IMG/VR virus record: IMGVR_UViG_3300010334_000023 | Coordinates: 62,001 to 126,000 of that record | Reading direction: 5' to 3' (one strand) | Length of the DNA stretch: 64,000 nucleotides | Shown: positions 227 through 48,933 of the stretch, one piece after another | Numbering within the stretch: the stretch's first letter is position 1 | Layout: the number at the start of each line of letters is the position of its first letter | The notes under the pieces: generated by a model | What the model was told of the DNA's origin: nothing | The model's input: the letters and a program-made list of their open reading frames with translations, nothing else | Databases searched by the model: none | Translations under genes and position numbers: made by a program

Positions 227-1339
227 ATGGGACGTCCCCTCAAGAAGAAATATTTTGGCAATGTCACTGCCAGCGGACAGGCAATCATAGGCAACGCATG
301 GATACAGGGCGACACAGTCGCACGTCCAAGCTGGATAGTAAAGCAGCTGACCAGCAGCAGCTATCAGTGGCTCAGTGTCAACGGACAGGGTCCAGCAACG
401 CCAGGCCAGTGCTATCTAGTCAACGGACCAATCACGGGTCCAGGACAGGCCAACATCGCAGTTTACCCATATGGCGGCGAAGGCGGCGGCGCAGTTGCTG
501 CCAATGCTAACCTAGGTGTGTACGCTGGCACTGTCATAGTGGCCAACACGGGTTCTGTCACACAGGATTACGGCGTGGGCAACGTGCTCAGCTTGACAGG
601 CGGCACATACACTGGCAACCAACAGGCCAACGTCACTGTAACCAGCGTCAAGGTCGCAGCTGACAACATATCCACAGCGGGCACACGTTACAGCGTGGGC
701 GACACACTGACCTTCAGTGGAGCAGGTTACAGCACTCCTGTGGTTTTGACAGTTAGCTCAGCCAATGGCACAGGTGGTATCACAGGCGTGAACATCACCA
801 ACGGCGGAGTTTACACCAGTGCTGCCTTGCCCGCAGATCCAGTGGCATCAACTTCCAACGTAGCAGCCAACGTGGATGCCAACGGTGCCACGTTCAATTT
901 TGTCTGGGGCATCAACGCATTCAGCGTGGCAAACATAGGCGACTACACCACACTGCCTGCCAATCCGGTCAGCCTCAGCGGTGGTGGTGGTACAGGCGCA
1001 ACCATCAACGTGACTTACCAAGTCAGCAGCGTACAGGTCACCAACGGTGGCAGCGGATTTGATCCCGGCAACGAAGCCAGCGTGACATTTGGCACAGGCA
1101 ACGCCACAGCAGTGGGTGTGGTCAACGCAGCCGGTTCTGTGACCAGTGTGACTGTGACCAGTGGCGGCAGCGGCTATGTGGCATGCCCCACAGTGTCTCT
1201 GAATCCAATCAGCACACCCACACTGGCTGCGGAGATATATGACAACACTGTCAAGAACTTCATTGGTCAGACTTGGAGTTGGTTGCCAAACGGCTATCAG
1301 TTGCCTGGTCCAACCTGGGCACACTTGAACACACAATAA
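227..1339 (+). CDS. Virion structural/decoration protein with G/T/N/V-rich beta repeats
   Basis: 370 aa; MGRPLKKKYFG N-terminus; VTNGGSG(Y/F) repeats; TAAATA at 160-165 and AAGGAG RBS; paralog of 1452..3218. Confidence 0.6.
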   Translation: MGRPLKKKYFGNVTASGQAIIGNAWIQGDTVARPSWIVKQLTSSSYQWLSVNGQGPATPGQCYLVNGPITGPGQANIAVYPYGGEGGGAVAANANLGVYAGTVIVANTGSVTQDYGVGNVLSLTGGTYTGNQQANVTVTSVKVAADNISTAGTRYSVGDTLTFSGAGYSTPVVLTVSSANGTGGITGVNITNGGVYTSAALPADPVASTSNVAANVDANGATFNFVWGINAFSVANIGDYTTLPANPVSLSGGGGTGATINVTYQVSSVQVTNGGSGFDPGNEASVTFGTGNATAVGVVNAAGSVTSVTVTSGGSGYVACPTVSLNPISTPTLAAEIYDNTVKNFIGQTWSWLPNGYQLPGPTWAHLNTQ

Positions 1340-21658: not shown

Positions 21659-21680
21659 GATAATGAAAAGGTAGGGGTTA

Positions 21681-22277: not shown

Positions 22278-22301
22278 GTGTGATTCTCCTATGTCGCAGA
22301 G

Positions 22302-22309: not shown

Positions 22310-22334
22310 CCAGACGTGTGTCCGATATCAGCTG

Positions 22335-27987: not shown

Positions 27988-30900
27988 TTATACGTTGATG
28001 TTGTTGCTACCGTTTGGTAGCGGATCTGCGTCATTCAACACCCTGATTGGTATGTAGATGAACTCGATCGCCTTTTCTGGCTTGATAGCTATATCAACCC
28101 AAAGCTCGTTGCGATCGATCCTAATCGGTGTGTTGTTGCTGCTATCGCACACGACTGAGAAGTCGTAGAGCGCACGCAATCCAACCAAGTTACCCATGAA
28201 GCTGTTAAACGCTATGGTAACTGCCTGCCTGGTCTGAGCGTCGTTTGGCTCAAACAAGAACGGCTGTGCCAACTGCCTTAGGTTGTAAACCAAGTAGTTG
28301 ATCAGGCGCGCAACATTGACTCTGTCCAGGCTTGTGGTGATTGGATCCAAGGTCTTCTGTCCATATACAACCAAACCACGATTTGGTATGAACGTGATCG
28401 GATTGATCTTGTTCACATACAGCACGTCGCGCTGTCCTTGGTTTAGACTGACTGGCTGATATGTACCGTCTGACTTGAGGTAACCAACGCTCAATGCGCC
28501 AGCAACCAAACCACGATTGAAACCAGCTGGAGCAAACCAAGGATAAGCTACTTGGTCATTGTAAGCATATACCGTGAGTGCCATGGTGCTTGGCGGCACA
28601 AACACTTGGTTTCCGTCCAAGTTCACTTCCAGTGCCCAGGGATAGTAAACTGCTGCGTATGATGTGTGGGTTATCAAACCATCAATGCTGTCATAAGCTG
28701 CGTTGTTGGCATTGGTAGCCCACTGCTGCAGGCTAGTGGTATCAGCTGGTAGCTCTCCAGGAGGATCTGCTAGGATGAAAGCTATCTGTTGTATGTCAAC
28801 ATTGAGCAGGTTCATCTCAGCCAAGCATTCTATGTAACCCGGTGTTGCTATCAAGTTGTAGAAGATCGAATCACCGCGTATGGCTTGGTTGCTAGCAAGC
28901 GAAGCATTAAGCGCTCTAAAGACCATAGCACGCTGCGCATCTGGTCCCATGTAAGGGGTGCCATTTGGACGGTTACCGCTAGCTGTGACCCAGCAATCCG
29001 GATCATAACCTTCAGAAGTGTTCACATCTGGGAAATAATCCATATAGTACTGCTTGACATTGTAGGTGCTATAACGAGTGTTGAACAGCAACATACCAGC
29101 TGGATAAAGCTCTGCGTTAGGCGCATCGCTATCCACATAGTTGCTGACTACCATCGCGCTAGGAGCTTGGCTGCCATTGGTCTTGCCATTGTTATTGTAT
29201 CGCGCGTCAGTGAATATGATGCCCGAAGGACTGCTGTGATTGGTGTTATCGATCAGTGTCCATGATCCAGATGATCCATCGTAGCGGTATAGCACTGGAT
29301 AGGGTGTCACGCTGCTGTCTACCCAGATGTCGTTGGTAACCAATGGACTAAGGTCGCTCTGTGTGCTAGGCATGCTGCCATCTATGATTGGACCATTTGG
29401 ATCTGTAGCTGGATAGGCATTCCTATAACCCTGCCAGATCTGGCCGCTGCCGACCATAATATCAACCTGTAGGTAGGTGTTATACCATAGCGTACCGTCT
29501 GCCGGAGGTCCTACTGGATTGGTGGTGCTCGGTGTATACATCAGTGTTACCCAAGCAGAACCGTCCCATTGATAAAGAACTGTCTTGGCCGTAGCAGGCA
29601 TGTCGCCGTCATTGTTATAACGAGCATACACTGTACCGTAGGTCTTGCTAGAACCAAAAGCAGCATTGGCTACAGCATCGCTGCTGTACATAGGCACAGT
29701 GTTGGTCAGAGGATTGATATTCTGCTCCACCCATATCGTACCATTGTACTTCTTAACTACCATGTTAGCGCCGCGATCGGCTGGTGTGGTATTGATCCAC
29801 ACGTTGGTAGCAGCAGTCTGTGCCAGTGTGCTAGGTACTGTAAGAGATGGATAGTAACCCTGATAAACCATCTGTCGTCCAAACACATAGCCAACTTGTA
29901 TACCTGCGCTGTTAAGAGGAGTTCCGCTGATATCCTTCAGTATGAACTGTGTACCGTTTGTGTTGGTGATTGTGAGATGGTTGCCAGTAGACACGCTAGC
30001 CACGATCGGACCACTTGGGAAAGCAGCATTGATAGCAGAGACCACACCAGCCAACGTGTTGTTAGGTGATGCCGGCACGTAAATCGTGGTAGCTATTCCT
30101 GTGCCAGGATTGATGCTGAATGTGTCAGCAGTTAGATATGCCATGCTAACAGTGAATGTAGCGTTGGTGCCGCTGCCCCCGGTGACGCTCACCGGATTGG
30201 TAGGTGCCACCGTGTAGTTGCCAGGATTGGTCACGGTCACTGTGCCAACACCCCAGCCAATAGTCACTGTGGCATTAGTACCGTTGCCGCTGGTTGATGA
30301 AGGTGTCACAGGATTAGCTGGGACGTTGGTGATGTGCTGTCCGGGCTGTCGTATGGTCAAGGTAACAATAGAGCCGCCGCCTCCGATGCTGGCCACTTCT
30401 AGTATGGTCGGAGTCACATAGGCTGGACCATCAAAAGTAAGCGTATCGCCTTGAGCATAACCAGTTCCAGTAGCAGATATGCTAGCCGCTACAGCCTGTA
30501 TGCTAGCAACAGTCAGCACACCCGTTACGCTGTGGGTACCACCAACGACATTAAGCGTGTCTCCTGGTGCGTAACCAGCACCAGGCGCAACTACAACCGG
30601 CGCTGGCTGTGTTTGTCCTGCTATGTTGCCGTTTGATATCTCAAGCGTAGCAGCTGTGAATGTTGGATTAGCCACAGTACCTGTCACTGCTCCATAGTAA
30701 GTCTGCGTGGTTGGCATACCTGCAGTCTGCCATGGGTGTGTGGTATTTGTTTCTGTGGTTATGTCATGGAAGAAAATGTCAGTAGCATCATAGTTGGTGA
30801 TTACCAAGAAGTTGCTGCTACCAGAAGTGGCAATGCTAGCCAAGGCATTGAAACTATTGGCATCAAGAACCGAATTGATCGAAGTTACAAAGCTGCTGAG

Positions 30901-32076
30901 AGAAGTTCCCGCCACAGTGATGGTCACAGGCACTGCATCACCAATGCTTATAGTGCATTGGTTGCCTATAGTGAAGGTTGGATTGCTGACTGTGCCCTGC
31001 ACCACACGCGGTGCTGCTTCGCGCCATCCCCAACCTGGATAATCCATGTCAGTGCTGCCAACCAAGAACCACCAAGCGTCTGTGTTACCGTTAAGCGTGG
31101 TCTGTTCGATCTTCTGCCAGATCTTGTTCTCCATTAATTCGGTAGTCGGATCAGTGCTGTATGCATCAACTATGAACTCACCAACTGTGCCGTAAGCATG
31201 TATTGGTAATATGGTGTTAGTTGGCTCCGGAGTCATAAATCCGATATCCTCTAACACGTATATGTTAGAATAAAGCAGATCAATCATCGTGGTGATATCA
31301 GTGCCGGTGATGCGTAGATAGTAGAGATCTTCTATCGTAGCTACTGTTGGATCAGGCTTGCCGGTGCGAGCATAGATCGTAGCGCTAATGCCAGAGTTAT
31401 GTATGGCGTTGTTGTTGATAGCACTTGCTACATCACTGAGGCTCATGCCAACTGTCATGGGCACTGTAGTTCCATTAATCACCAAGTTACCAACATGAGT
31501 AACGGCAGGAGTGCTGGCACTGGTCAGTCCAACTGATGCCTGTACCATTATCTCGAGATCAGTTGACTTTGAAAGTGTCAACGGAGTCTTGGCGCTCCAG
31601 CTCAATGCGCTGTTAGCGTTCCCATTGCTGCTGAATATGCCCCAAGTGGTGTTTGCTGTGTCAAGCCAATATTGGTTGAGTGAAGGAGGACCTGCTGGTT
31701 CAGTGGTGCTTGGCACCATCTGCTTTAGATCAACATCCGCACGCAATACATATGCAGTGTTTGCTATACCGAGATATTGATATGCTGTGAACAGACCCAG
31801 CTCATTCAGCTGATTACCATAGTCAGGCGTGCCAGCGGTGGTGTAGAAGGTTGGAGTTCCAAACGTCTGCAGCAGATCACGTTGGCTGCTGATTAGATAA
31901 AGTTGGTTAGCATTAGCAGCAGTAGTACCGGGCGCGTAAACACCTGAGCTACCAGGTTGTAGCTTATTAGCTGCCGTAGCAATGAGAATGAGCGGGACGG
32001 TTCCAGCACCTGCGCTAGCATATACGCTTTCATCTGTGACTGTGACGCTTACGCCGGGTGATACTAGGGTTGCCAT
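27988..32076 (-). CDS. gp18: Tail sheath protein with large inserted domains (1362 aa)
   Basis: LVSPGVSV, WFAPAGFNRG, YGQKTL, RVNVARL, FEPND, IKP.KAIEFIYI. Confidence 0.95.
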   Translation of the reverse strand: MATLVSPGVSVTVTDESVYASAGAGTVPLILIATAANKLQPGSSGVYAPGTTAANANQLYLISSQRDLLQTFGTPTFYTTAGTPDYGNQLNELGLFTAYQYLGIANTAYVLRADVDLKQMVPSTTEPAGPPSLNQYWLDTANTTWGIFSSNGNANSALSWSAKTPLTLSKSTDLEIMVQASVGLTSASTPAVTHVGNLVINGTTVPMTVGMSLSDVASAINNNAIHNSGISATIYARTGKPDPTVATIEDLYYLRITGTDITTMIDLLYSNIYVLEDIGFMTPEPTNTILPIHAYGTVGEFIVDAYSTDPTTELMENKIWQKIEQTTLNGNTDAWWFLVGSTDMDYPGWGWREAAPRVVQGTVSNPTFTIGNQCTISIGDAVPVTITVAGTSLSSFVTSINSVLDANSFNALASIATSGSSNFLVITNYDATDIFFHDITTETNTTHPWQTAGMPTTQTYYGAVTGTVANPTFTAATLEISNGNIAGQTQPAPVVVAPGAGYAPGDTLNVVGGTHSVTGVLTVASIQAVAASISATGTGYAQGDTLTFDGPAYVTPTILEVASIGGGGSIVTLTIRQPGQHITNVPANPVTPSSTSGNGTNATVTIGWGVGTVTVTNPGNYTVAPTNPVSVTGGSGTNATFTVSMAYLTADTFSINPGTGIATTIYVPASPNNTLAGVVSAINAAFPSGPIVASVSTGNHLTITNTNGTQFILKDISGTPLNSAGIQVGYVFGRQMVYQGYYPSLTVPSTLAQTAATNVWINTTPADRGANMVVKKYNGTIWVEQNINPLTNTVPMYSSDAVANAAFGSSKTYGTVYARYNNDGDMPATAKTVLYQWDGSAWVTLMYTPSTTNPVGPPADGTLWYNTYLQVDIMVGSGQIWQGYRNAYPATDPNGPIIDGSMPSTQSDLSPLVTNDIWVDSSVTPYPVLYRYDGSSGSWTLIDNTNHSSPSGIIFTDARYNNNGKTNGSQAPSAMVVSNYVDSDAPNAELYPAGMLLFNTRYSTYNVKQYYMDYFPDVNTSEGYDPDCWVTASGNRPNGTPYMGPDAQRAMVFRALNASLASNQAIRGDSIFYNLIATPGYIECLAEMNLLNVDIQQIAFILADPPGELPADTTSLQQWATNANNAAYDSIDGLITHTSYAAVYYPWALEVNLDGNQVFVPPSTMALTVYAYNDQVAYPWFAPAGFNRGLVAGALSVGYLKSDGTYQPVSLNQGQRDVLYVNKINPITFIPNRGLVVYGQKTLDPITTSLDRVNVARLINYLVYNLRQLAQPFLFEPNDAQTRQAVTIAFNSFMGNLVGLRALYDFSVVCDSSNNTPIRIDRNELWVDIAIKPEKAIEFIYIPIRVLNDADPLPNGSNNINV

Positions 32077-37881: not shown

Positions 37882-37935
37882 ACGTTTTACCCATGCAATA
37901 TTTACCATAAATATCCATGAAAAGCAGGACAAAAC

Positions 37936-39597
37936 ATGGAATACTGGTACTCAGGACAGCTACGCAATTATCGACTGCAGTTCATACGTGCATTTAGCAA
38001 CTTCAGCTACAGCGTGGGAACCAATCCAGATGGTACCCCCATCTTAGTTAGAGTGCCATGCCGATATGGGGATCCAAGTAGGATAGCTGCTACCATAGTC
38101 AAGGGCAACAGCGAAAACAAGCTGTTGACCACACCATTCATTACCTGTTGGATAAGCGGCCTAACACTAGCACCAAATCGCCGGCAAGGACCTCAGATAG
38201 TTGATACTGTGCTGGTCAATGAAAGAGCCTACAATCAAGACACCAACCAATATGACAACACACCAGGAAATCGCTACAGCGTCAATCGCTACATGCCTGT
38301 GCCTTATGAATTAAGCATGTCGGTGGACATGTGGACCAACAACGAGAGCGTCAAGGAACAGCTGGTAGAACAGATCATGGTCCTGTATAACCCAGCCATA
38401 GAAGTGCAGACCAGCAATAACCCCATTGATTGGACTGTGCTCACTTGGATAGAGATGCAGGATCAGATCACATGGAGCAGCCGTACCATACCCATCGGTA
38501 CCGAAAATCCAATTGACGTGCTGACCATGGTCTTCCGTTTTCCAATCTGGATCACACCTCCTGCACAGGTCAATCAGCAGACTATCATTGAAAACATCGT
38601 TACCAACATCGTGCAGGGTACCAAAGAAACGCCCAATCAAGTAGAGTGGAGCGATTATGAGTTCCTAGCTAGACGCACATTCACACCAGGCGATCTCAGC
38701 ATTTCCCTGACATGGATAGGCAATAACCAATATACCATGGAACTAGCTAGCTATGGTGGCAATCCAGTTGACAACGGTAACCAAGCCACTGTGACTTTCT
38801 CGCAGGTAAATCCGATTTTGGTTCCCGGCACCAGCTTCAGCTTTAACGGCATAGTCATACCAATCAACACTACCAACATAGCCACGTTCGTAGACAGTGC
38901 TGCTGCTCTGATGATCAATACCAGCTATAACATACAGCTGCAGAACTACAACACAGTGATGTTCATCAACAACACAGCAGAGGACAACACCTTTACCAAC
39001 GTGACCGGAAATCCGTTGACTGGTCTGGGACTGCTAGCAACCACCTATCCCGGTGGGGAACTGGCATGGTGGAGGTTGATCAACTATTACGGGACTTTGA
39101 ATCCTTACAACATTTATGGTAATAATGCTAGCCAGATCACTGTTTGGACAACACAGCCAAACGTGGATCCAACAACTACCTATCAAGCAGCAGGTTGGAT
39201 TCAGCCACATCCAACGAACCAAAACCTACTCATATGGACGGTAGAGCCAGATAGCTTGCCCCCGACTACCATAGCTCCAATCACAGCAGTGGTAAATCCG
39301 CAGTCCAAAGGACCAGGTGCGGGATTGCCAGCTGCTGCTCCAGGTCAAAGCTATCTGCTAACCGAAATGCCATCTCTTAACAGCGTTAGCTGGGGCACTG
39401 TCACTGCCAATGCCAACGACATCATAACCTTCGATGGCACAAACTGGCAGGTCACATGGTCGGCTCAGAACTATCAGGGCAGCATGCAGTACGTACAGAA
39501 CCTCTTTCAAGGCAAGCTGCTTGAATGGAACGGTACGCATTGGAGCGAGTACATATTGCCTCGCTACGCAGCAGGTTTCTGGCGCTTCGCTCTATAA
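37936..39597 (+). CDS. gp15: Tail terminator / sheath stabiliser with C-terminal extension
   Basis: YWYSGQ.R..QF...FSNF, VP.RYG, PVPYEL, EQI.VLYNP. Confidence 0.82.
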   Translation: MEYWYSGQLRNYRLQFIRAFSNFSYSVGTNPDGTPILVRVPCRYGDPSRIAATIVKGNSENKLLTTPFITCWISGLTLAPNRRQGPQIVDTVLVNERAYNQDTNQYDNTPGNRYSVNRYMPVPYELSMSVDMWTNNESVKEQLVEQIMVLYNPAIEVQTSNNPIDWTVLTWIEMQDQITWSSRTIPIGTENPIDVLTMVFRFPIWITPPAQVNQQTIIENIVTNIVQGTKETPNQVEWSDYEFLARRTFTPGDLSISLTWIGNNQYTMELASYGGNPVDNGNQATVTFSQVNPILVPGTSFSFNGIVIPINTTNIATFVDSAAALMINTSYNIQLQNYNTVMFINNTAEDNTFTNVTGNPLTGLGLLATTYPGGELAWWRLINYYGTLNPYNIYGNNASQITVWTTQPNVDPTTTYQAAGWIQPHPTNQNLLIWTVEPDSLPPTTIAPITAVVNPQSKGPGAGLPAAAPGQSYLLTEMPSLNSVSWGTVTANANDIITFDGTNWQVTWSAQNYQGSMQYVQNLFQGKLLEWNGTHWSEYILPRYAAGFWRFAL

Positions 39598-39604: not shown

Positions 39605-40354
39605 ATGCTTACTGAAAAGATTGCCAAGCTCAACATCGATGAAAAGAAGTTTGAACAGGTGTTTACACCCGAGGTACATCGTGTAGCTGACGTGCTACGC
39701 AAGTACGGATTTGATGCCAGAGTAGTAGGCGGAGCGGTGCGCGATTTCGTGCGCGGCAAAGCCCCTCGAGACATAGACTTTGCCACCGACGCTGATCCCA
39801 GCGAGCTAATCTACATTTTCAACATGGAAGACATTGATCACGATGACAAAGGCATTGGTCACGGAACCATCAAAGCAGTGTTTCCCAATGGCAAAGTAGA
39901 TGTTACCAGCATTGCCTACAAGCTAGAGCTCAAGGACGGAAAGGTACGCATCATACGCGGCCAAGACTGGGAACAGGATGCTCAGCACAGAGATCTCAGC
40001 ATCAACAGCATGAGCATTGACAAAGACGGCACGCTCTATGATTACACAGGAGGTCTCGATGATCTGCGCAACCAACGTGTGGTCATGCTACCTGTGACAC
40101 AGTATAGGATCAAGGATGACCCTCACTTGATCATGCGATGGTTCAAGGCACTGGGATATTTTAACAGTCCTCGTTGGCCCAAGCACGATCTCGAGATCAT
40201 CAAGCAGAACATGCCTCTGCTAGCCAAGATCAAGGACGAAGAAAAGACTGATCGAGAGCTAAGCAGCATCATGCGCAGCAGGCATGGACAGAAGATTGTG
40301 CGCATGATGTGCGACATGGGTGCAGACAAGTATCTGGGAATAAATTGCGATTGA
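39605..40354 (+). CDS. Class II nucleotidyltransferase (CCA-adding/poly(A) polymerase head), atypical
   Basis: VGGAVRD, DIDFAT, HGT, RDLSINSM, DYTGG.DDL; TATAAATA 4 nt before ATG 39605. Confidence 0.88.
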   Translation: MLTEKIAKLNIDEKKFEQVFTPEVHRVADVLRKYGFDARVVGGAVRDFVRGKAPRDIDFATDADPSELIYIFNMEDIDHDDKGIGHGTIKAVFPNGKVDVTSIAYKLELKDGKVRIIRGQDWEQDAQHRDLSINSMSIDKDGTLYDYTGGLDDLRNQRVVMLPVTQYRIKDDPHLIMRWFKALGYFNSPRWPKHDLEIIKQNMPLLAKIKDEEKTDRELSSIMRSRHGQKIVRMMCDMGADKYLGINCD

Positions 40355-40378: not shown

Positions 40379-41242
40379 ATGAAAAAAGATCTAATCATAG
40401 GTTCGTTCACCAACTACAGCTGGGATAAGATCCAGTACTGGGTCAACAGCATAGACGCTTGCGGCTTCAAGGGCGACAAGGCCATGCTGGTTTACAATGC
40501 CGAACTGAGCACAGTTCAGAAGCTCAACGATCGAGGTTTCAAGATAATGGGATTTAGTCAGGATCCCGCCAACGGTAATCTCGTATACAATGGCCAGCTG
40601 ATCATAGTCGTAGAACGCTTCCTGCATCTGCACAGCTTCCTTGATAATCTCATGAAGAGTGAGGACTATCGCTATGTGATTCACACGGATGTCAAGGATG
40701 TGGTATTCCAGCGCAATCCCAGCGAATGGTTGGATGCCAACATGGGCAATGCTAAGATACTAGCCAGCTGCGAGAGCCTGCAGTATCAGCACGAACCCTG
40801 GGGCAACGAAAACTTACAGAACAGCTTCCCTTGGGTGTACGATAAGATGAAGACCAATCCCATATGGAACTGCGGTGTTCAATGTGGCGTACCCAGCGTG
40901 ATGAAAGATCTGTGGCTCAACATATATCTGCTTAGCGTAGGTAGCCAGCATGCTACCAAGGTTCACAATCCCGATCAAGCTGCTTACAATGTGTTGCTGG
41001 GACTAGAACCCTACAAGAGCATCACCAAGTTTACCATGAGCGAGGACGGTTGGGCATGCCAAGCTGGAACCAGTTATGATCCAACCAAGATGCATACCTT
41101 CAAACCGCACTTGCTTGAACCTCAACCAAAGTGGGATGGTGAGAATGCTACCACTAGCAGGGGGGCTAGGCATTACATACTTCATCAGTATGATCGCATC
41201 CCGGAGTGGAAACCCATAATTGAGGCCAAACATGCAGGTTAA
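40379..41242 (+). CDS. GT-A fold glycosyltransferase
   Basis: HTDVKDVVFQRNP, NCGV, DQAAYN, HQYDR. Confidence 0.72.
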   Translation: MKKDLIIGSFTNYSWDKIQYWVNSIDACGFKGDKAMLVYNAELSTVQKLNDRGFKIMGFSQDPANGNLVYNGQLIIVVERFLHLHSFLDNLMKSEDYRYVIHTDVKDVVFQRNPSEWLDANMGNAKILASCESLQYQHEPWGNENLQNSFPWVYDKMKTNPIWNCGVQCGVPSVMKDLWLNIYLLSVGSQHATKVHNPDQAAYNVLLGLEPYKSITKFTMSEDGWACQAGTSYDPTKMHTFKPHLLEPQPKWDGENATTSRGARHYILHQYDRIPEWKPIIEAKHAG

Positions 41243-42197
41243 TTTACAAGAAGAATATCAGAAGGTTGACCAGATGCTGAGCAGTTTGGGCGTACCGCAC
41301 TTCAACCCAGGTCGCAGCATCGTGACCAGCGTTTACGGTAAGGAGATTGCCAGCGGTTATGTTCTAATGCGTGAGCTAGCCTTACAAGAAATCAAGCTAC
41401 CAATTGAAATATTCCATCGCAAAGGCGAGATAACACTCCAGCAAGCAGCCATACTGCGCAGCCCTGCACCTGATCAGATAACTGTGCGAGAGATACAGGG
41501 CAACGCCAAGGATTTCACTACTATCTATGGGACCAAAGCGGGTTGGAGCACCAAGATATATGCTCTATGGGAAAGCCAATACTCAGAGAACCTGTGGCTG
41601 GATGCAGATAGCTTTCCAATAAGAAATCCAGAATTCTTGTTTGATGACCAAGAATACTTGGACAAGGGTAGCTTGTTTTGGCGAGATGTTTTTAGCACTG
41701 ACCGCGCTAATCGCTATCACGACGACGCGCCAATGTGGCGCATCTTCAACGTGAATCCAAACGACGGCGAACCTTTTGAAACAGGACAGCTGCTGTTCAA
41801 CAAGGCACAATGCTGGGCTGAAATGAACTTGGTTAAACACTACGCTGACAACTGCGAGGTGTACTATCACTTTGGCGGAGATGCGGAAACATTCCGCATG
41901 GCGTGGCAACATCTAGATCTCAGAAATGGTCGACGGCCAAGCTACATCAACTACCAAGCTGACCCAATGGTGCCTTATGGATTCATGCCGTTTGGACCTT
42001 TCCACAAGGGCCACTCTAACCAATACAAGAAGTGGGGTGGCGGAACAGTGATGGTCCAGCGCGATCGCAATGGTCTAGAGCTGTTCAACCATCGCAACAT
42101 GGAGAAGTTCTCGCTTGGTAATAATCCTGTATACACTGACATAACCAATGAGCTGCGCTACCATCAGCACATACAAGACCTGAGGCGTTTGATATGA
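41232..42197 (+). CDS. Alpha-mannosyltransferase-like glycosyltransferase (MNN2/GT71-like)
   Basis: LPIEIF, LWLDADSFP.RNPEFLF, FW.D, ETGQLLFNK, GDAETF. Confidence 0.78.
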   Translation: MQVNLQEEYQKVDQMLSSLGVPHFNPGRSIVTSVYGKEIASGYVLMRELALQEIKLPIEIFHRKGEITLQQAAILRSPAPDQITVREIQGNAKDFTTIYGTKAGWSTKIYALWESQYSENLWLDADSFPIRNPEFLFDDQEYLDKGSLFWRDVFSTDRANRYHDDAPMWRIFNVNPNDGEPFETGQLLFNKAQCWAEMNLVKHYADNCEVYYHFGGDAETFRMAWQHLDLRNGRRPSYINYQADPMVPYGFMPFGPFHKGHSNQYKKWGGGTVMVQRDRNGLELFNHRNMEKFSLGNNPVYTDITNELRYHQHIQDLRRLI

Positions 42198-43336
42198 TAG
42201 ATCAAGTTACTGCGGTGAGATTTCCTAGCGAATGGCAGATCAAGAGGCAGCCAGCACGGCCCAATATGCTACGCATTGACTACTGCGGCGGCATGAAGTT
42301 TGACGAAAACTTTGACTGGGACAACATCTGGTACGATTGTGTGCAGTTGAACGATACACAGACCATACTGATCGGTCCGCCGATCTACGAAGGCAAGCAA
42401 TGGTTTGCTGCGAACGCAGGCTTCGCAGATCGGCATGGACGCGCACTGGACTATCAGTTTTATGATCTGGACAGGGTCAGCTATACGTTAGTGCATACCA
42501 AAGGCATAGACGAGTCACTCATCATGATCAGCAAGAAAGCTGATCCAGTGCACATCGAAGTCCATCACAATGATGGATATTTTAACGGCCACAAGACCAT
42601 GGTAACCCTGCAGAAAGATAACCCAATACAATGGATTGAGCAGTGGATGGACTATCACTATCGTGTGCATGGTATAGATGGTTTCTTGATCTATGACAAT
42701 ACCAGCAGCAAGTACACGGTCAACGAACTCGAGAGCAAACTAAGCAGAGATTATCTAAAGCTGAAGATAGTACCGTGGCCTTATCCATATGGTCCGCAGG
42801 GCAGCGACAACGCACCCTGGGACAGCGACTACGGACAGTACTGCATGCTTGAACATGCCAAATATAGGTATCTCAGCCATGCGGCGTTGGTTTTGAACAA
42901 TGACATAGACGAACTGATAGTAACCAAGGGTCCTTCTTTGGACAAGATCCAATCACAGTTAGAATCTGGGCCATATCACTGCCTAGCATACCAAGGACGT
43001 TGGATTGAACCTCACGATGTACCACGTAACAAAGGCGCATATGAAGTACCATTTGAATCAAGATTGTTCAGTGATTATTGCTGCACAGATGCCAATGACA
43101 AGCGAGGTATCGGACACAAGTGGATGTTGGTACCACAGAAAAACATCAACTATCAGTGGTTAGTTCATCGCATAGCCGGACCATATGGTGTGAGCGAGGA
43201 TCTGTTCTACGGACATTATCTTGCTATGAACACCAATTGGAGCTGGGAACGCGACAAATACACTGGCAATGTCAAGGATCTAACACCTGATCCGTGGCTA
43301 CATACAGCGCTGCAGAAGATTGAGGTATATAAATGA
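42194..43336 (+). CDS. Glycosyltransferase (GT92/GT2-like)
   Basis: W..W.DYH...GIDGFLIYDN.S, NNDIDE. Confidence 0.7.
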   Translation: MIDQVTAVRFPSEWQIKRQPARPNMLRIDYCGGMKFDENFDWDNIWYDCVQLNDTQTILIGPPIYEGKQWFAANAGFADRHGRALDYQFYDLDRVSYTLVHTKGIDESLIMISKKADPVHIEVHHNDGYFNGHKTMVTLQKDNPIQWIEQWMDYHYRVHGIDGFLIYDNTSSKYTVNELESKLSRDYLKLKIVPWPYPYGPQGSDNAPWDSDYGQYCMLEHAKYRYLSHAALVLNNDIDELIVTKGPSLDKIQSQLESGPYHCLAYQGRWIEPHDVPRNKGAYEVPFESRLFSDYCCTDANDKRGIGHKWMLVPQKNINYQWLVHRIAGPYGVSEDLFYGHYLAMNTNWSWERDKYTGNVKDLTPDPWLHTALQKIEVYK

Positions 43337-44022
43337 AAAAGCTTTTGGTAGTAACAGGCCCGCAGGGTTCTGGCAATCACATGTGGAGCAAGGTTCTAAG
43401 TGGTACTCCGGGTGTGCGAGGCTGGGAACAGTTGCAGAATGAATACTGGGTTGGACACGGTAACGAGCCGTTCGCACTGATATGGCAAGATCCCAAGCTG
43501 TTCCATGAGATAGACTGGGAACCAGGTAATTATGTTACCAGCATCAGCTGTCCAACTGTTCCAGTGGGAGGACCTACTGCTCCCAGCGTAGAACCACCCT
43601 ATGGCGATTTCATGGCTAATGCTAAGCAAGCAGGATTTGACGTCAAGCTGGCAATCATAGGACGAGACAAGAACATCCTAGAATTCCAACAGAACAGATT
43701 GCGAGAAAACCATAGCACACCAAGATTCTTAAAACACATCGAAGTGCTGATGTCCTATGATCCTGTTTTCATCAGCACAGAATTACTGTATCTCTATCAA
43801 GACCACTATCTCAGACAACTGTCAAAGCTCTTGGATTTTCCAATCAACAATACCAATCTACCGGAGATACTTAAAGACAATACCAATCTCAAATATCTAC
43901 ACCCAGTAGAATCTTATTGGCTAGATGAACACTGTAGGACCAATTCTAGAAAAAACGGCGATCCAACTAACCCTTATGTGTATCAACCAAAAAAGAACTC
44001 CGGAGGAGAAACAAACACATGA
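43333..44022 (+). CDS. P-loop / sulfotransferase-like protein
   Basis: VVTGPQGSGNHMWSK; later IIGRD. Confidence 0.5.
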   Translation: MKKLLVVTGPQGSGNHMWSKVLSGTPGVRGWEQLQNEYWVGHGNEPFALIWQDPKLFHEIDWEPGNYVTSISCPTVPVGGPTAPSVEPPYGDFMANAKQAGFDVKLAIIGRDKNILEFQQNRLRENHSTPRFLKHIEVLMSYDPVFISTELLYLYQDHYLRQLSKLLDFPINNTNLPEILKDNTNLKYLHPVESYWLDEHCRTNSRKNGDPTNPYVYQPKKNSGGETNT

Positions 44023-44978
44023 AGAAATTGCTGTTCGTTGTACACAGATATGCTCCGTTCCCAGGTGGTAGCGAATACTATGTGCAGGCCATGGCGGAAG
44101 AAGCACTGAGCAGAGGACACCAAGTAGCTGTGTTTGCTGGTGAACACCAAGGTGATCACAATGGCGTGCATGTAACCAGCGATCCTCAGATACTTGGTCG
44201 GCCCTGGGATCTCATAGTAGTGCACGGCGGCGATGTTGGTTTACAGAACTTCGTGCTGACCAATGTGCTGAGAATACCAAGTCCCATGCTTTACATGCTG
44301 ATACTGCCTAGCAACAGCGAAACATGCCTACATGCTCTCAGAGAATGTGCTTACCTTGGTTGGAGCACACCAGATGACATCAACCACATACGCAAGCATG
44401 GACAGAGCGATAAAGCTAAACGTGTGCGTCATGGTATCAAGCTGAACGAAAGCATAGGTAAACCAGGATTCAAAGACAAGCATGGTATAACCAAACGCAT
44501 GTTTCTCAGCTGCGGTGGCTATTGGCCCAACAAGAAGATGCGAGAGCTTGCTGATGTGTTTACCAGAGCAGAGCTTGACGATGCAGTGCTAGTCACTACT
44601 GGTTATGACAATCGCATGGATCTAATGCCTGCAGCCAGCGATACAGTGATGCCATTGATGATAGATGACAAAGCAGAAGTGCTCAATGCTATTGCCGAAG
44701 CTGATTGCTACCTCATGCACAGCAACCAAGAAGGATTTGGTCTAGTAATATTAGAGAGCATGCTCAATGAAACGCCGTGGATATCTCGTCAGATCGCAGG
44801 TGCTGCTATGCTCAACAAGTTTGGTCAAACCTACCAAACAGATAGCCAATTGATCAACTTGCTCAAGAATTTTGACCCAGTAACCTATGATTTGTCAGCT
44901 GCTAAACAGCACATACTGGATAATCATACCATACGCAGCACAGTTGATGACATAGAAGCGATCATCACTTCTTCTTAA
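44019..44978 (+). CDS. GT4 (GT-B) glycosyltransferase
   Basis: YAPFPGGSE, NKK, ADCYLMHSNQEGFGLVILESM..PW. Confidence 0.88.
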   Translation: MKKLLFVVHRYAPFPGGSEYYVQAMAEEALSRGHQVAVFAGEHQGDHNGVHVTSDPQILGRPWDLIVVHGGDVGLQNFVLTNVLRIPSPMLYMLILPSNSETCLHALRECAYLGWSTPDDINHIRKHGQSDKAKRVRHGIKLNESIGKPGFKDKHGITKRMFLSCGGYWPNKKMRELADVFTRAELDDAVLVTTGYDNRMDLMPAASDTVMPLMIDDKAEVLNAIAEADCYLMHSNQEGFGLVILESMLNETPWISRQIAGAAMLNKFGQTYQTDSQLINLLKNFDPVTYDLSAAKQHILDNHTIRSTVDDIEAIITSS

Positions 44979-46563
44979 CACGACCCAATGCTACAGCATC
45001 AGGAACCTTGATGTCCCTGATGTCTTTCTCGCCTGGTGTGACGATGCGTCCAACCTTTTGCTGCTGTGTTTTTTCAGCAGACTTGGCTGCTTTCCTAGCC
45101 ACTGCTGGATCGATCTTGGTGGTCAAGCTGGCATCAGGTTCGTCAGTCATCTTAGCACCCTGACCTATCTTGAATCCCAAACGTCCTTTGATTTCGGTGG
45201 CACTGAAGAACTTACCACTGTAGAATTTTATGCTACCCTTGAACTGCGGAGGCCAAACCAAATCATAACCTTGGCATAACAGATCAGCTCCCTGTACTTT
45301 GGTCTTGAAGTACATCTGCACAATGTTTGAATGGTTCAAGATCTCTTTGATGACATCCGTGTAATCTTCATCATTGAGCTTGGTCGTGACCTGCCTAGCT
45401 ATGGCAGCCAACGCATGTTTAGCAGGATCATACTGCGGATGATGAGTGTTAGCAGCATAATCGCTCATGTAATCTGCTATAGTTTCATCCGGTCTGTAGT
45501 CTCGCTTACCATTGTTGATGCTGCTCTTGATCTTGTTAGCCTGTGCATCTGTCACGATACCTTCCGTGGCAGCAACTTTGAGCAAGCCTTCCACAGCTCC
45601 AGAATCCATGATAGTGGTTATGACATCGTTAAACTTGCTAATCTTATCATCCTGCCAAAATGATGCTGGGAACTTGTCTCGATTTTTGGTAAGCGCATCA
45701 TACAAGCCCTTCACGCTAGCAGCTGCGCCGCCAACCTTAGCTTTGGTGCTTATCAGTATTTCCGAGGTCTTTGTTATCACGGTGCTGTCAAACAGGGTTT
45801 CGCCTGTGTTTGTGTTGTATTCTATGCTACTGCTACTTAGGCTTTTGCCCCCGTTCATGACTTCTTCTATCTCTGGTAGCTGATCACTAGGTTCAAACTG
45901 ACCTGTTATCAATGCTATAGGGCTGCCCCATTCGCCTAGATATTTGCTATGTAGATTAGCGTCTGCGGCCCCATCCTTGATCACATAACCGGTGCCATTA
46001 CCACCAGCTAGAGCACGCAGATATTCCTGCATCTGATCAACTGCTTGATCGCCTGCTGTACCTCTGGCAGAATCCAGCAAAGATGCTACCTGAGTTGGTC
46101 GCACGCGCTGCTTTCCCTTGACGACTTCTGCGGGTTTTAACCCGCTGCGTTCGCTGAAACTTACCTTGCGATTCATCACATAACCACCATGACCTGGAAT
46201 GACTCCAGGCGGTATGTTAGTGAGCTTTCCTTCTAGCTTGCCCAAGTCGCGAGTGAACAACACATAATGTTCAAAACCTCTGGGAGTTTCCATGTTCACT
46301 ATGTAAGCTGATTTGGTCCCGCGATCTCGGCTGTTTATCTCATATACCTTACCAGACTTGCCTTGCTTCCAATCCTGATATGCGTCTGTGAAATCTTCAT
46401 TGGAATCATACTGAGGTTGATCTTCTGGCAAAAGCGTGAGACCTTGGAAGGTGGCTATATCGTCGCGATCAGTAGGATCAACATATTCATCACCTGTGCG
46501 CCTAGCCACGAAACCGCGGCTCTCCACAAGTTGGCTAGCAGGAGCAAGATGCCAAATTCTCAT
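44965..46563 (-). CDS. Hypothetical late protein, possibly nuclease-fold
   Basis: 532 aa; N-terminal LVE site; E...LFDS...ISTK weakly resembles PD-(D/E)xK. Confidence 0.5.
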   Translation of the reverse strand: MRIWHLAPASQLVESRGFVARRTGDEYVDPTDRDDIATFQGLTLLPEDQPQYDSNEDFTDAYQDWKQGKSGKVYEINSRDRGTKSAYIVNMETPRGFEHYVLFTRDLGKLEGKLTNIPPGVIPGHGGYVMNRKVSFSERSGLKPAEVVKGKQRVRPTQVASLLDSARGTAGDQAVDQMQEYLRALAGGNGTGYVIKDGAADANLHSKYLGEWGSPIALITGQFEPSDQLPEIEEVMNGGKSLSSSSIEYNTNTGETLFDSTVITKTSEILISTKAKVGGAAASVKGLYDALTKNRDKFPASFWQDDKISKFNDVITTIMDSGAVEGLLKVAATEGIVTDAQANKIKSSINNGKRDYRPDETIADYMSDYAANTHHPQYDPAKHALAAIARQVTTKLNDEDYTDVIKEILNHSNIVQMYFKTKVQGADLLCQGYDLVWPPQFKGSIKFYSGKFFSATEIKGRLGFKIGQGAKMTDEPDASLTTKIDPAVARKAAKSAEKTQQQKVGRIVTPGEKDIRDIKVPDAVALGRVKKK

Positions 46564-47297
46564 AGCGAATCCATTGGTAGGTGCATGATGCCTTTGGCTG
46601 CAGATTCTCGAGCTTGTGCCAGCTTGGCATCTCTTTCAGGATCATCTTTCAGTGCTCGCAATATGCTCTTGGCTGAATTGAGATCGTCAGCAGTGGCATC
46701 AGGATTGAGCAGCACTTTGGCCACGGTGTCTCTGTCTCGAGCTACTTCAGTGTTGCCTTCTCTGGTCATGAGCTTGCCAGTGAAAGCATCAAACTTGAGA
46801 CCCAGTGCCTTGCCTATGCTGTTCATCAATATGAATATGTCACTGCCCTTGAATTCTGGATCATCATACATGCCCCTAGGTCCATGTTGGTGATAGGGAG
46901 CCACGGTACCAACGTCGTCTATGACCATGTAATCTACCTGAGCAATACCGCCGTCAAATGGTATGCCAACATGCACGTTACGACCACTCATCTTGGCATC
47001 ATAGCCTTTCTGCACTAGATATTCTTCCAGTGCTTTCTTGGCAGACTTTGCTGGATCTTTCTGGCTGATCGTCTTGAAGTATTTGACCAAATCACTGGTT
47101 TCTATCATGAGATCAATGTCGCCCGGAGGCACTTTCTTAAAACCTGCCGAGCCTATGTCCTTGGCTAGATTCACACGCAGTGCTGGTGGTAAGAGCTTTA
47201 TCGCATCATCAACCACTGCTGACACTTGATCTAGTGGCACAGCAGATGCGTTTGGTATAGCGTTACCGCCTTCGGTTATTATCTCTCGCCAACGCAT
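46560..47297 (-). CDS. Pol-beta superfamily nucleotidyltransferase-like protein
   Basis: IGSAG.K...GDIDL and QVDYM third Asp; MRWREIITE leader. Confidence 0.68.
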   Translation of the reverse strand: MRWREIITEGGNAIPNASAVPLDQVSAVVDDAIKLLPPALRVNLAKDIGSAGFKKVPPGDIDLMIETSDLVKYFKTISQKDPAKSAKKALEEYLVQKGYDAKMSGRNVHVGIPFDGGIAQVDYMVIDDVGTVAPYHQHGPRGMYDDPEFKGSDIFILMNSIGKALGLKFDAFTGKLMTREGNTEVARDRDTVAKVLLNPDATADDLNSAKSILRALKDDPERDAKLAQARESAAKGIMHLPMDSL

Positions 47298-48920: not shown

Positions 48921-48933
48921 TTTTGGCTTCCTT

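What the first reader, a model, noticed from the sequence alone, without database searches (positions are those of the whole stretch)
40379..44978. Five-gene glycosylation operon inside the virion module, including a fungal-type mannosyltransferase
Seen: overlapping genes for a GT-A, an MNN2/GT71-like enzyme, a GT92-like enzyme, a sulfotransferase-like P-loop protein and a GT4, between gp15 and gp23. Established: GT71 and GT92 are best known from eukaryotic glycan elongation, not T4-style DNA glucosylation, and some phages glycosylate their virions. Also seen: the sheath, gp15 and the two MGRP proteins carry S/T/N-rich extra domains with many N-x-S/T triplets (e.g. NVT, NIS, NGT, NIT, NAT in 227..1339). 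Inference: a multi-step virion glycan pathway, possibly supplied by the radical SAM cassette.
Basis: partly seen in the sequence, partly recalled or inferred. Interest (0 to 1): 0.68.

Follow-up and report, generated by a model that had tools for sequence, protein, structure and literature searches.

The report
Jumbo-phage glycan-building operon, target unknown
An uncultured freshwater giant phage carries a conserved set of four sugar-adding enzymes, plus a sulfate-adding enzyme in this strain only, next to its tail and head genes; the genes are real and look active, but it is not known whether they decorate the virus particle, and the proposed N-x-S/T signal is no more than chance.

Summary
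The five genes exist as described. g1 (40379-41242) is a GT-A enzyme by predicted fold. g2 is GT71-like (PF11051), g3 GT92-like (PF01697), g4 has a sulfotransferase fold, and g5 is GT4. They are translationally coupled, lack membrane segments and keep their catalytic motifs in relatives.

The window comes from an uncultured freshwater T4-like jumbo phage of about 0.5 Mb. The module g1-g2-g3-g5 is conserved in 26 related loci. It is absent from the cultured relatives Phosso and Atu_ph07, and g1-g3 match no other phage in the collection, PA5oct included. g4 is a strain-specific insertion. Its family elsewhere sits beside APS kinase, and this genome also has an APS-kinase-like gene.

A multi-step glycan pathway, sulfated in this strain, is well supported. 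The acceptor is unresolved.
- N-x-S/T sequons are at chance level (146 observed, 147.7 expected) and are not conserved.
- The slot downstream of gp15 is an accessory-gene hot spot.
- Remote cellular homologues of g1 lie in O-antigen-type loci.
- No route to hydroxymethyl bases was found, which weakens a DNA target.
- A supply role for the radical SAM cassette has no support.

My estimates: virion protein about 0.4, host envelope glycan about 0.25, DNA about 0.1.

The parts
37906..37913 (+). CATAAATA, a T4-late-promoter-like motif 22 nt upstream of the gp15 start codon
   Evidence: The same NATAAATA motif sits 20-38 nt upstream of the sheath, portal, 35921 virion protein and u99 genes. Exact TATAAATA occurs 4 times in the window against 0.85 expected. 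Function as a promoter is inferred.
37936..39597 (+). gp15 homologue (tail sheath stabiliser/terminator), 553 aa, first gene of the + strand unit
   Evidence: PF16724 at 62.8 bits; phrog_11196 at E 2e-86. Residues 1-281 and 351-553 are shared with Atu_ph07 gp140, which lacks the GT module.
38779..38985 (+). gp15 residues 282-350: N/T-rich, nearly uncharged insert missing from Atu_ph07. A speculative glycan acceptor
   Evidence: S+T+N 0.36, charged residues 0.04. The insert is conserved as a domain in relatives, but its sequons are not.
39605..40354 (+). CCA-adding/poly(A)-polymerase-type nucleotidyltransferase. The ORF is open from 39434; the likely start is ATG 39605
   Evidence: PF01743 at 90.4 bits; phrog_2244. 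The homologue in L042 is called at 249 aa. Probably an unrelated accessory gene in the same unit.
40379..41242 (+). g1: virus-specific retaining-type GT-A glycosyltransferase, 287 aa
   Evidence: No Pfam, PHROG or NCBIfam hit. Model pLDDT 94.5. Foldseek finds alpha-1,3-GalT, ABO GTA/GTB and XXYLT1. There are 828 metagenomic homologues. D104 and D107 are invariant in the 25-sequence alignment A1 and kept in all 23 loci sequences.
41232..42197 (+). g2: GT71-like (Mannosyl_trans3) GT-A glycosyltransferase, 321 aa from the ATG
   Evidence: PF11051 E 3.8e-20, covering the N-terminal half of the model. DxD motif at 128-130 kept in 23 relatives. Weak PDB hits to glycogenin, a GT8 enzyme.
42194..43336 (+). 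g3: GT92-like GT-A glycosyltransferase with an N-terminal domain of about 145 aa of unknown role
   Evidence: PF01697 E 2.2e-10 over residues 148-315. The two aspartates of the D-I-D motif at 237-239 are kept in all 23 sequences; one relative has D-T-D.
43333..44022 (+). g4: sulfotransferase-fold protein (loop TGPQGSGNH, no Walker lysine), a strain-specific insertion
   Evidence: Present only in this genome's own copies among the 26 loci and in a strain about 98% identical. Lowest GC3 of the operon, 0.443. Homologues lie in APS_kinase-TctA-X-ST cassettes.
44019..44978 (+). g5: GT4 (GT-B, retaining) glycosyltransferase
   Evidence: PF13692 at 33.1 bits; PF00534 at 31.7 bits; phrog_2170. E-x7-E motif identical in 18 sequences.
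30136..31359 (-). Sheath residues about 240-647: S/T-rich, nearly uncharged insertion, against about 108 aa in Atu_ph07. A speculative glycan acceptor
   Evidence: BLASTP segments 1-239 and 648-1346 are shared; S+T 0.21-0.27, charged residues 0.01-0.14. Sheath identity.

Best explanation
The operon is a self-contained cytoplasmic glycan-assembly module.

Enzymes. There are four soluble, catalytically intact glycosyltransferases. By family analogy, three are retaining (g1 GT6/GT8-like, g2 GT71-like, g5 GT4) and one is inverting (g3 GT92-like). They would add sugars one after another from nucleotide sugars to build a short oligosaccharide of about four residues. In this strain a PAPS-dependent sulfotransferase (g4) caps or decorates that glycan, helped by a phage APS-kinase-like gene elsewhere in the genome.

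Expression. The genes are translationally coupled. No terminator-like hairpin separates them from gp15, and gp15 is preceded by a late-promoter-like motif. They are therefore probably made late, with the virion proteins.

Acceptor. The most likely acceptor is the phage's own virion surface. I expect O-linkage on the S/T-rich, nearly uncharged extra domains of sheath, gp15 or fibre-like proteins, not N-x-S/T sequons. This would give a glycan coat whose distal part varies between strains.

Shown: gene identities, motif conservation, synteny, module conservation, and presence in an RNA library. Inferred: order of action, donors, late timing, acceptor.
For: Identities.
Catalytic motifs kept in 18-23 relatives down to 42-60% identity.
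No hydrophobic segment (maximum Kyte-Doolittle 19-residue mean 1.53) and net negative charge for all five proteins.
Module g1-g2-g3-g5 conserved in 26 viral loci, always beside virion genes. It follows gp15-CCA in most loci and in the 303-kb relative L042. In the 493-kb contig L041 it lies two genes downstream of a baseplate gene.
g1 stays 56-61% identical where gp15 has dropped to 39-45%.
Late-promoter-like motif before gp15 and other structural genes, and no terminator-like hairpin from gp15 to g5.
The part downstream of g3 varies (nothing, HNH endonuclease, sulfotransferase, or GT34-like + DegT + TPP enzyme + two epimerase/dehydratases), as expected for an exposed epitope.
No route to 5hmC or 5hmU in the complete relative.
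Lineage-specific S/T-rich uncharged inserts in sheath and gp15.
g4 family linked to APS kinase in three independent gene contexts (P0134, P0132, P0130), and an APS-kinase-like gene in this genome but not in the g4-less relative.
A lake metatranscriptome holds 99-100% identical contigs over g1-g5, one of them bridging g3/g4/g5.
Precedent: mycobacteriophage capsid and tail-tube glycosylation, as summarised in PMC12619734.
Against: There is no direct evidence for any acceptor.
- Sequons are at chance and not conserved.
- S/T/N/G-rich composition is usual for fibres and sheath decorations. It is also seen in the sheath of GT-less Atu_ph07.
- Most of the gp15 extension is shared with GT-less phages.
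- The slot after gp15 is an accessory hot spot: CCA enzyme here; NAD synthetase and DprA in Atu_ph07.
- The major capsid protein has no extra C-terminal tail of the mycobacteriophage kind; it aligns to its last residue with GT-less phages.
- Remote cellular homologues of g1 work in O-antigen-type loci.
- The metatranscriptome has no contigs over CCA or the gp15 3' end, so co-transcription with gp15 is not shown. DNA carry-over in that library cannot be excluded.
Confidence: 0.4

Rival explanations
1. Host envelope remodelling. The soluble GTs act at the inner face of the host membrane on undecaprenyl-linked O-antigen, capsule or EPS intermediates and use the host's own flippase or ABC exporter. 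This would change the infected cell's surface, for example to block superinfection, to stop progeny being trapped on debris, or to evade grazers.
For: Remote cellular homologues of g1 (22-26% identity) sit in classical polysaccharide loci. In a Cyclobacteriaceae contig the locus holds Wzm/Wzt, FkbM, GT11, GT61, two GT2 and GT4. In Sphingomicrobium it holds GT2, a deacetylase and GDP-mannose dehydratase. This is the usual reading of multi-GT clusters in large cyanomyoviruses (PMC12801897). The relative L042 carries NDP-sugar tailoring enzymes typical of O-antigen loci.
Against: The operon has no initiating phosphoglycosyltransferase, flippase, polymerase, ligase or Gtr-type membrane protein, and no membrane segment. 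g1's close family is essentially viral. The module keeps a fixed place among late or virion genes in a lytic-type jumbo lineage. Late expression would leave little time for export.
Confidence: 0.25
2. DNA hypermodification. The GTs build an oligosaccharide on a modified base of the phage genome to evade restriction and CRISPR, as in T4 and the MT/5mYOX-GT clusters.
For: Phage GT-A and GT-B enzymes related to LPS or teichoic-acid enzymes do glycosylate DNA. Such clusters can lie among structural genes, and two successive GTs are known (bioRxiv 10.1101/2023.12.21.572611). A variable distal part also fits an arms race with nucleases.
Against: The complete 518-kb relative has one ThyA-family gene with the canonical thymidylate-synthase motifs (PCH; RSCD...LPFN) at 345 bits. 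It has no C5-methyltransferase and no Tet_JBP hit, although the control for the last search was silent. The window's own genome encodes ThyX. All five proteins are net acidic, which is weak evidence. Four sugars plus sulfate on DNA has no precedent. No similarity to GT63, GT72 or JGT-type enzymes came up.
Confidence: 0.1
3. Another cytoplasmic acceptor: RNA (for example tRNA, given the CCA enzyme upstream and RtcB two genes downstream of the module in L041), a small molecule, or a soluble sulfated oligosaccharide.
For: A CCA-type nucleotidyltransferase is in the same unit in most relatives, and RtcB is near the module in L041. Elsewhere the g4 family belongs to APS_kinase-TctA-X-ST cassettes that are not tied to virion genes.
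Against: Four GTs is many for a nucleoside modification. The CCA and RtcB adjacency may only reflect accessory-gene clustering. No precursor pathway was identified.
Confidence: 0.1
4. One reading: N-linked glycosylation of virion proteins at N-x-S/T sequons, with sugars supplied by the radical SAM cassette.
For: S/T/N-rich virion proteins with many N-x-S/T triplets do exist.
Against: Triplet counts equal composition-shuffled expectation in every named protein and across the window. The sequons in the gp15 insert are not conserved. None of the five genes matched a family other than those named. The rSAM genes are twitch-domain (NF033640) and viperin/MoaA-like proteins on the other strand, more than 12 kb away.
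Confidence: 0.03

Closest known systems
Mycobacteriophage virion glycosylation (Freeman et al. 2023, as summarised in PMC12619734)
   Same: Phage-encoded cytoplasmic glycosyltransferases, thought or shown to decorate capsid and tail proteins with O-linked glycans. The number and type of GTs vary between phages.
   Different: Different GT families. Different host type: Actinobacteria there, most likely a Gram-negative freshwater host here. Glycans there sit on C-terminal tails of the capsid and tail-tube subunits; the capsid protein here has no such tail. No sulfation is known there. Glycosylation is not demonstrated here.
Chlorovirus PBCV-1 and mimivirus virus-encoded glycosylation of capsid and fibrils (from my own knowledge, not tested here)
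   Same: Soluble virus-encoded GT-A-type enzymes without ER or Golgi anchors build multi-sugar glycans on virion proteins independently of N-x-S/T sequons. g1's structural neighbours include giant-virus GT-A proteins.
   Different: Those are eukaryotic viruses with no detectable sequence relationship beyond the fold. Their clusters include sugar-nucleotide pathways, which are missing from this operon but present in the relative L042.
Multi-GT clusters of large T4-like cyanomyoviruses (S-SCSM2R, S-SCSM1, P-SSM2; PMC12801897)
   Same: Large aquatic T4-like phages with many GTs and NDP-sugar epimerases. The target is unresolved: host surface, DNA and virion have all been proposed.
   Different: Those have other GT families (GT2, GT10, GT11, GT25 and others), located in hypervariable islands. 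Here a fixed four-gene module is conserved across a ~0.5-Mb lineage. g1, g2 and g3 have no tblastn match in 50,697 cultured phage records, apart from one distant g1 hit.
T4 alpha/beta-glucosyltransferases and MT/5mYOX-GT DNA hypermodification clusters (bioRxiv 10.1101/2023.12.21.572611)
   Same: Phage GTs, sometimes two in series, sometimes near structural genes.
   Different: No hydroxymethylase, methyltransferase or TET partner was found in the complete relative. The GT families differ. The proteins are acidic.
Fungal GT71 (Mnn1/Mnn2/Mnn5) and eukaryotic GT92 enzymes
   Same: g2 and g3 score above the Pfam gathering thresholds of PF11051 and PF01697 and keep the DxD motif.
   Different: There is no type II membrane anchor. 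The g2 match covers only positions 2-131 of the 273-position model. Donor sugar and linkage are unknown, so 'mannosyltransferase' is a family name and not a shown activity.

Membership tests
GT71 / Pfam PF11051 Mannosyl_trans3 (g2) | Profile match above the curated gathering score | tested here: met
   72.8 bits against a cut-off of 22, E 3.8e-20, but only model positions 2-131 of 273. The six-frame genome search gives 65.7 bits.
GT71 / Pfam PF11051 Mannosyl_trans3 (g2) | GT-A DxD metal/nucleotide-sugar motif | tested here: met
   D128-x-D130 is kept in all 23 aligned relatives.
GT71 / Pfam PF11051 Mannosyl_trans3 (g2) | Type II membrane anchor and GDP-mannose donor, as in the yeast enzymes | tested here: not met
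   No hydrophobic segment: maximum KD19 is 0.74. The donor cannot be tested with these tools.
GT92 / Pfam PF01697 (g3) | Profile match above the gathering score, with a DxD motif | tested here: met
   41 bits against a cut-off of 23. The two aspartates of the D-I-D motif at 237-239 are kept in all 23 sequences; one relative has D-T-D.
GT4 (g5) | Glycos_transf_1 / Glyco_trans_1_4 domain above the gathering score, with the E-x7-E motif | tested here: met
   PF13692 at 33.1 bits (cut-off 27) and PF00534 at 31.7 bits (cut-off 26.4). EGFGLVILE is identical in 18 sequences.
GT-A fold, retaining GT6/GT8-like (g1) | Rossmann-like GT-A fold with an acidic metal-binding motif | tested here: met
   Model pLDDT 94.5. 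Foldseek E 4e-10 to alpha-1,3-GalT, ABO transferases and XXYLT1, TM 0.52-0.57. D104 and D107 are invariant in the 25-sequence alignment A1 and kept in all 23 loci sequences. No CAZy or Pfam family membership could be shown.
PAPS-dependent sulfotransferase (g4) | Sulfotransferase fold with a 5'-phosphosulfate-binding loop that lacks the Walker A lysine | tested here: met
   The top nine VIA-align matches are all sulfotransferases, Z 11.1-8.3, with kinases at or below 8.2. ESM Atlas structural neighbours are Sulfotransfer_1/3 clusters. The loop TGPQGSGNH is invariant and has N where a kinase has K.
PAPS-dependent sulfotransferase (g4) | Sequence-profile membership (Pfam Sulfotransfer_1 to _5) and the 3'-phosphate-binding motif | tested here: inconclusive
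   No Pfam or NCBIfam hit. The PDB profile search is empty. Foldseek reaches only E about 2e-3. The 3'-PB motif was not mapped.
PAPS-dependent sulfotransferase (g4) | Genomic link to PAPS supply | tested here: met
   APS_kinase lies two genes upstream of g4 homologues in three independent gene contexts. An APS-kinase-like gene (54.7 bits) is present in this genome and absent from the g4-less relative.
Mycobacteriophage-type virion glycosylation | Glycans demonstrated on virion proteins | not testable with these tools
   The phage is uncultured and no proteomic data were available.
Mycobacteriophage-type virion glycosylation | S/T-bearing C-terminal extension on the major capsid subunit | tested here: not met
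   The capsid protein aligns to its last residue (416) with GT-less Phosso and PA5oct. The tail tube was not examined.
Sequon-directed N-glycosylation | Enrichment or conservation of N-x-S/T in the acceptor proteins | tested here: not met
   146 observed against 147.7 expected over the 61 ORFs tested. Each named protein is within 1 sd of its shuffles. Sequons are not conserved in the gp15 alignment.
T4-type / 5hmC-type DNA glycosylation | A pathway that makes a hydroxymethylated (or otherwise hydroxylated) base as acceptor | tested here: not met
   In the complete relative G001 there is a canonical ThyA only and no C5-methyltransferase. There is no Tet_JBP hit, but that search's control was silent, so that part is inconclusive. 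G000 encodes ThyX.
Gtr-type seroconversion / O-antigen modification | Membrane components (GtrA flippase, GtrB, GtrC, or Wzx/Wzy/Wzm-Wzt) in the cluster | tested here: not met
   None of the five proteins, nor the flanking ones, has a membrane-spanning segment or matches such a family.

The most novel reading that the evidence does not exclude
A lineage of ~0.5-Mb freshwater jumbo phages coats its contractile tail and fibres with a virus-made O-linked oligosaccharide. The glycan is built by a virus-specific four-GT module. Its terminal decoration is swapped between strains, and this strain adds sulfate, using a phage sulfotransferase and a phage APS kinase. This would be the first sulfated glycan on a phage particle and the first virion glycosylation system in a T4-like phage.
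Probability: 0.15. Interest if true: 0.8.

Novelty: new variant of a known kind. Interest (0 to 1): 0.55.

Why it matters
Virion glycosylation has so far been shown only for a few mycobacteriophages and for giant eukaryotic viruses. A conserved GT module in a widespread freshwater jumbo-phage lineage, with a variable and sometimes sulfated distal step, would extend the phenomenon to T4-like phages. It would point to glycan coats as a general way for large phages to alter adsorption, stability or recognition.

Even if the target turns out to be host polysaccharide or DNA, the module has value. It provides four uncharacterised, strongly conserved viral GTs, one of them (g1) without any family assignment. 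It also provides a phage sulfotransferase family tied to APS kinase, and both can be tested by simple heterologous expression.

Tried and rejected
- DNA similarity of the operon to 50,697 phage records: no match.
- tblastn of g2 and g3 against phages: none. g1 gave one distant hit, Virus Rctr41k.
- Sequence searches of g1, g3, g4 and of profiles A1 and A2 against PDB: nothing useful. g2 gave only weak glycogenin hits.
- NCBIfam: no informative hits for g1-g4.
- PHROGs for u532, u245 and the large proteins flanking the module in L041: nothing informative.
- 'Moraphages', which have four core GT orthogroups (PMC12619734), were considered as the lineage. Rejected: their genomes are at most 307 kb with Bacteroidota hosts, whereas this phage's capsid protein is 77% identical to Phosso's.
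- The TATAAATA at 39593 as a promoter for CCA and the GTs. Rejected as uncertain: it overlaps the gp15 stop codon and ends 4 nt before the likely CCA start codon.
- Co-occurrence of the GT module with the gp15 extension. Only a ~70-aa insert is lineage-specific; the rest is shared with GT-less phages.
- Radical SAM link. Only lineage-level co-occurrence was seen, with no functional signature.
- Literature searches for phage GT92, phage sulfotransferase with APS kinase, and twitch rSAM in jumbo phages: nothing relevant.
- Freeman et al. 2023 could not be opened and is cited only through papers that summarise it.
- Complex prediction and the large representative protein search were not used.

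Full report
**Source and setting.** The window is bases 62001-126000 of a 216-kb IMG/VR viral contig that CheckV rates 42% complete. Its major capsid protein (47721-48971, minus strand, phrog_138) is 77% identical to that of the 469-kb Sinorhizobium phage Phosso and 68% identical to PA5oct's. A 518,643-bp relative with terminal repeats (G001, reached through L017) shares the locus. Near-identical DNA is found in freshwater and lake metagenomes from many studies. The window therefore comes from an uncultured freshwater T4-like jumbo phage of about 0.5 Mb.

**The observation.** Five + strand ORFs occupy 40379-44978. The junctions g2/g3, g3/g4 and g4/g5 are 4-nt ATGA-type overlaps. g1 and g2 overlap by 11 nt if g2 starts at ATG 41232, which is where relatives start.
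- g2 matches PF11051 Mannosyl_trans3 (72.8 bits, E 3.8e-20, N-terminal half of the model).
- g3 matches PF01697 GT92 (41 bits).
- g5 matches PF13692 and PF00534, the GT4 domains.
- g1 and g4 have no Pfam, PHROG, NCBIfam or PDB sequence match.
- For g1, an alignment of 25 of its 828 metagenomic homologues gave a model with pLDDT 94.5. Its best PDB matches are retaining GT-A enzymes: alpha-1,3-galactosyltransferase, the ABO transferases and xyloside xylosyltransferase (E 1e-9 to 1e-10, TM about 0.55). Its nearest viral structures are uncharacterised phage proteins and giant-virus GT-A proteins.
- For g4, a model with pLDDT 90.7 gave weak Foldseek hits led by tyrosylprotein sulfotransferases. In the exhaustive VIA-align search the top nine matches are all sulfotransferases (Z 11.1-8.3), ahead of P-loop kinases. 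Its invariant loop TGPQGSGNH lacks the kinase lysine. The ESM Atlas structural neighbours are Sulfotransfer_1/3 clusters.

The D..D, DxD and E-x7-E motifs are kept in 18-23 relatives. None of the proteins has a membrane segment, and all are net acidic.

**Corrections to the map.** Between gp15 (37936-39597, PF16724) and g1 lies a CCA/poly(A)-polymerase-type nucleotidyltransferase (PF01743, likely start 39605). Between g5 and the capsid gene lie three unknown minus-strand genes.

**Conservation.** Twenty-six viral loci carry relatives of g2. In every locus long enough to show it, g1, g2 and g3 stand together, in nearly all cases followed by g5. In most loci they follow gp15-CCA and face the capsid gene. 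g1 stays 56-61% identical in genomes whose gp15 has dropped to 39-45%. In a 493-kb contig the same four genes lie two genes downstream of a baseplate gene, between large unknown proteins, with RtcB nearby. In a 303-kb contig the order is gp15-CCA-g1-g2-g3-like. It is then followed by a GT34-like gene, a DegT aminotransferase, a split TPP enzyme and two epimerase/dehydratases in place of g5. Cultured relatives lack the module. g2 and g3 have no tblastn hit in 50,697 phage records, and g1 has one distant hit. PF11051 is absent from Phosso, Atu_ph07 and all 14 control prokaryote genomes.

**g4.** g4 is present only in this genome's own copies among the 26 loci, and in a strain about 98% identical. 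In other relatives g3 abuts g5, or an HNH homing endonuclease fills the same slot. g4 has the lowest GC3 of the operon (0.443, against 0.535-0.597 for g1-g3). Its family has 557 homologues. In other phage contigs it lies in a recurring cassette APS_kinase-TctA-unknown-ST, once with two GT4 genes nearby and once with APS-reductase-like genes. This genome has an APS-kinase-like gene next to ThyX, outside the window (54.7 bits). The g4-less relative G001 has none. PAPS-dependent sulfation is thus well supported, though not proven.

**Tests of the interpretation.**
In an alignment of 12 gp15 homologues the sequons of the N/T-rich insert come and go. None of the five genes matched a family other than those named; GT41-type and OST-type enzymes were not searched for elsewhere in the genome.
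2. *Extra domains.* The proteins are indeed S/T/N-rich (0.26-0.29). gp15 residues 1-281 and 351-553 are shared with Atu_ph07, which has no GT module; only about 70 residues (282-350) are lineage-specific. The sheath has an insertion of about 400 aa that is S/T-rich and almost uncharged. Atu_ph07 has about 108 aa there, also S/T-rich. The 51989-53035 protein is a fibre with a conserved N-terminal anchor. Such composition is ordinary for fibres. The co-occurrence is therefore weak.
3. *Position.* In Atu_ph07 the genes after gp15 include NAD synthetase and DprA, so this slot collects accessory genes.
4. *Timing.* A NATAAATA motif lies 20-38 nt upstream of gp15, sheath, portal and other virion genes. 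There is no terminator-like hairpin from gp15 to g5. This is consistent with late co-transcription, which is an inference.
5. *Expression.* A lake metatranscriptome holds 99-100% identical contigs over g1-g5, including one of 772 nt that bridges g3/g4/g5. It holds none over CCA or the end of gp15, and DNA carry-over cannot be excluded.
6. *DNA target.* G001 has one ThyA-family gene with canonical thymidylate-synthase motifs. It has no C5-methyltransferase and no Tet_JBP hit, although that search's control was silent. G000 has ThyX. Known DNA-glycosylating clusters pair their GTs with such enzymes.
7. *Host-glycan target.* Remote cellular homologues of g1 (22-26% identity) lie in O-antigen-type loci with Wzm/Wzt, FkbM and several GTs, or with GT2, a deacetylase and GDP-mannose dehydratase. 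The 45-50% hits in MAGs are on short contigs of many phyla and are probably mis-binned phage.
8. *Radical SAM.* The cassette at 18255-27582 consists of three twitch-domain rSAMs (NF033640) and one viperin/MoaA-like rSAM. It lies on the other strand and shows no sugar-nucleotide signature. The family is hugely expanded in this lineage, but that is only a lineage-level co-occurrence.

**Conclusion.** The operon is a real, conserved and apparently active module that should build a short glycan, sulfated in this strain. Several lines point to an exposed glycan made late:
- the module's conservation;
- soluble enzymes;
- no DNA-precursor pathway;
- a variable distal step;
- proximity to late genes.

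The virion surface is my first choice (about 0.4). Host envelope polysaccharide (about 0.25) and DNA (about 0.1) remain open. The sequon-based N-glycosylation version and the radical SAM supply idea are not supported.

Phage GT clusters of unresolved target are known from large cyanomyoviruses, and virion glycosylation is known from mycobacteriophages. I therefore rate this a new variant of a known kind. Its notable features are the virus-specific g1 family, GT71- and GT92-like enzymes in a phage, and the sulfotransferase with its APS-kinase link.

Noticed in passing
window 18255-19424, 24009-25325, 26218-27582; G000:C1:161367-162731; G001 at about 87-102 kb, 144-152 kb, 381-387 kb and 454-458 kb: Very large expansion of twitch-domain radical SAM proteins (NCBIfam NF033640). 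The complete 518-kb relative has about 17 paralogues above the 170-bit cut-off, and this partial contig has 4. Phosso and Atu_ph07 have none above the cut-off. Function unknown.
   Followed up: partly
G000:C1:163866-164339 (L034 1498-1971), outside the window: APS-kinase-like P-loop gene (PF01583, 54.7 bits), immediately downstream of a ThyX gene and about 1 kb from a twitch rSAM gene. It is absent from the g4-less relative G001.
   Followed up: partly
L039, L040, L057, L059, L060 (other metagenomic phage contigs): A recurring cassette APS_kinase - TctA-family membrane protein - unknown ~350 aa - g4-type sulfotransferase. In different contigs it is accompanied by two GT4 genes, 2OG-Fe(II) oxygenases, APS-reductase-like FAD/ferredoxin genes or Fe-S assembly genes. 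It looks like a phage sulfation module with an unknown substrate.
   Followed up: partly
L005 3362-3937 (also L004, L006, L007, L025): An HNH homing endonuclease occupies the g3/g5 junction, exactly where g4 sits in this genome. The junction is an insertion hot spot.
   Followed up: yes
L042 11996-17586: In a 303-kb relative, g5 is replaced by a GT34-like gene, a DegT aminotransferase, a split TPP-dependent enzyme and two epimerase/dehydratases. That is an own nucleotide-sugar tailoring pathway attached to the same g1-g2-g3 core.
   Followed up: partly
window 46560-47297 (-): u245 carries a Pol-beta-type nucleotidyltransferase signature (GSAGFKKVPPGDIDLMIE) but matches no family model. With u99 and u532 it forms a minus-strand unit preceded by a late-promoter-like CATAAATA. 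u532 is variable or replaced in relatives, yet it is also near the module in L041.
   Followed up: partly
window 22302, 34214, 39593, 55069 (exact); 37906, upstream of 32076, 35921 and 47605 (one mismatch): A T4-type late-promoter-like motif (N)ATAAATA lies 20-38 nt upstream of the portal, sheath, gp15 and other virion genes. Exact TATAAATA occurs 4 times against 0.85 expected.
   Followed up: partly
window 5688-7313 (-), 17810-18262 (-), 4133-5629 (-): The window also encodes a GroEL-type chaperonin (PF00118, 272 bits), a TnsA-like endonuclease lying between the terminase region and the rSAM cassette, and a ResIII/DEAD-type helicase.
   Followed up: no
window 40429-44718, run X12: A lake-water metatranscriptome contains 99-100% identical contigs over all five genes, one of them bridging g3/g4/g5. 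It has none over the CCA gene or the 3' end of gp15. Coverage is sparse, so no transcript boundary can be claimed.
   Followed up: partly
L044-L049 (MAG contigs of Bacteroidales, a deltaproteobacterium, Victivallaceae, Lishizhenia, Stellaceae): g1 homologues at 45-50% identity occur in MAGs of unrelated phyla, mostly on contigs of 5-8 kb. They are most likely jumbo-phage fragments mis-binned into bacterial genomes.
   Followed up: no
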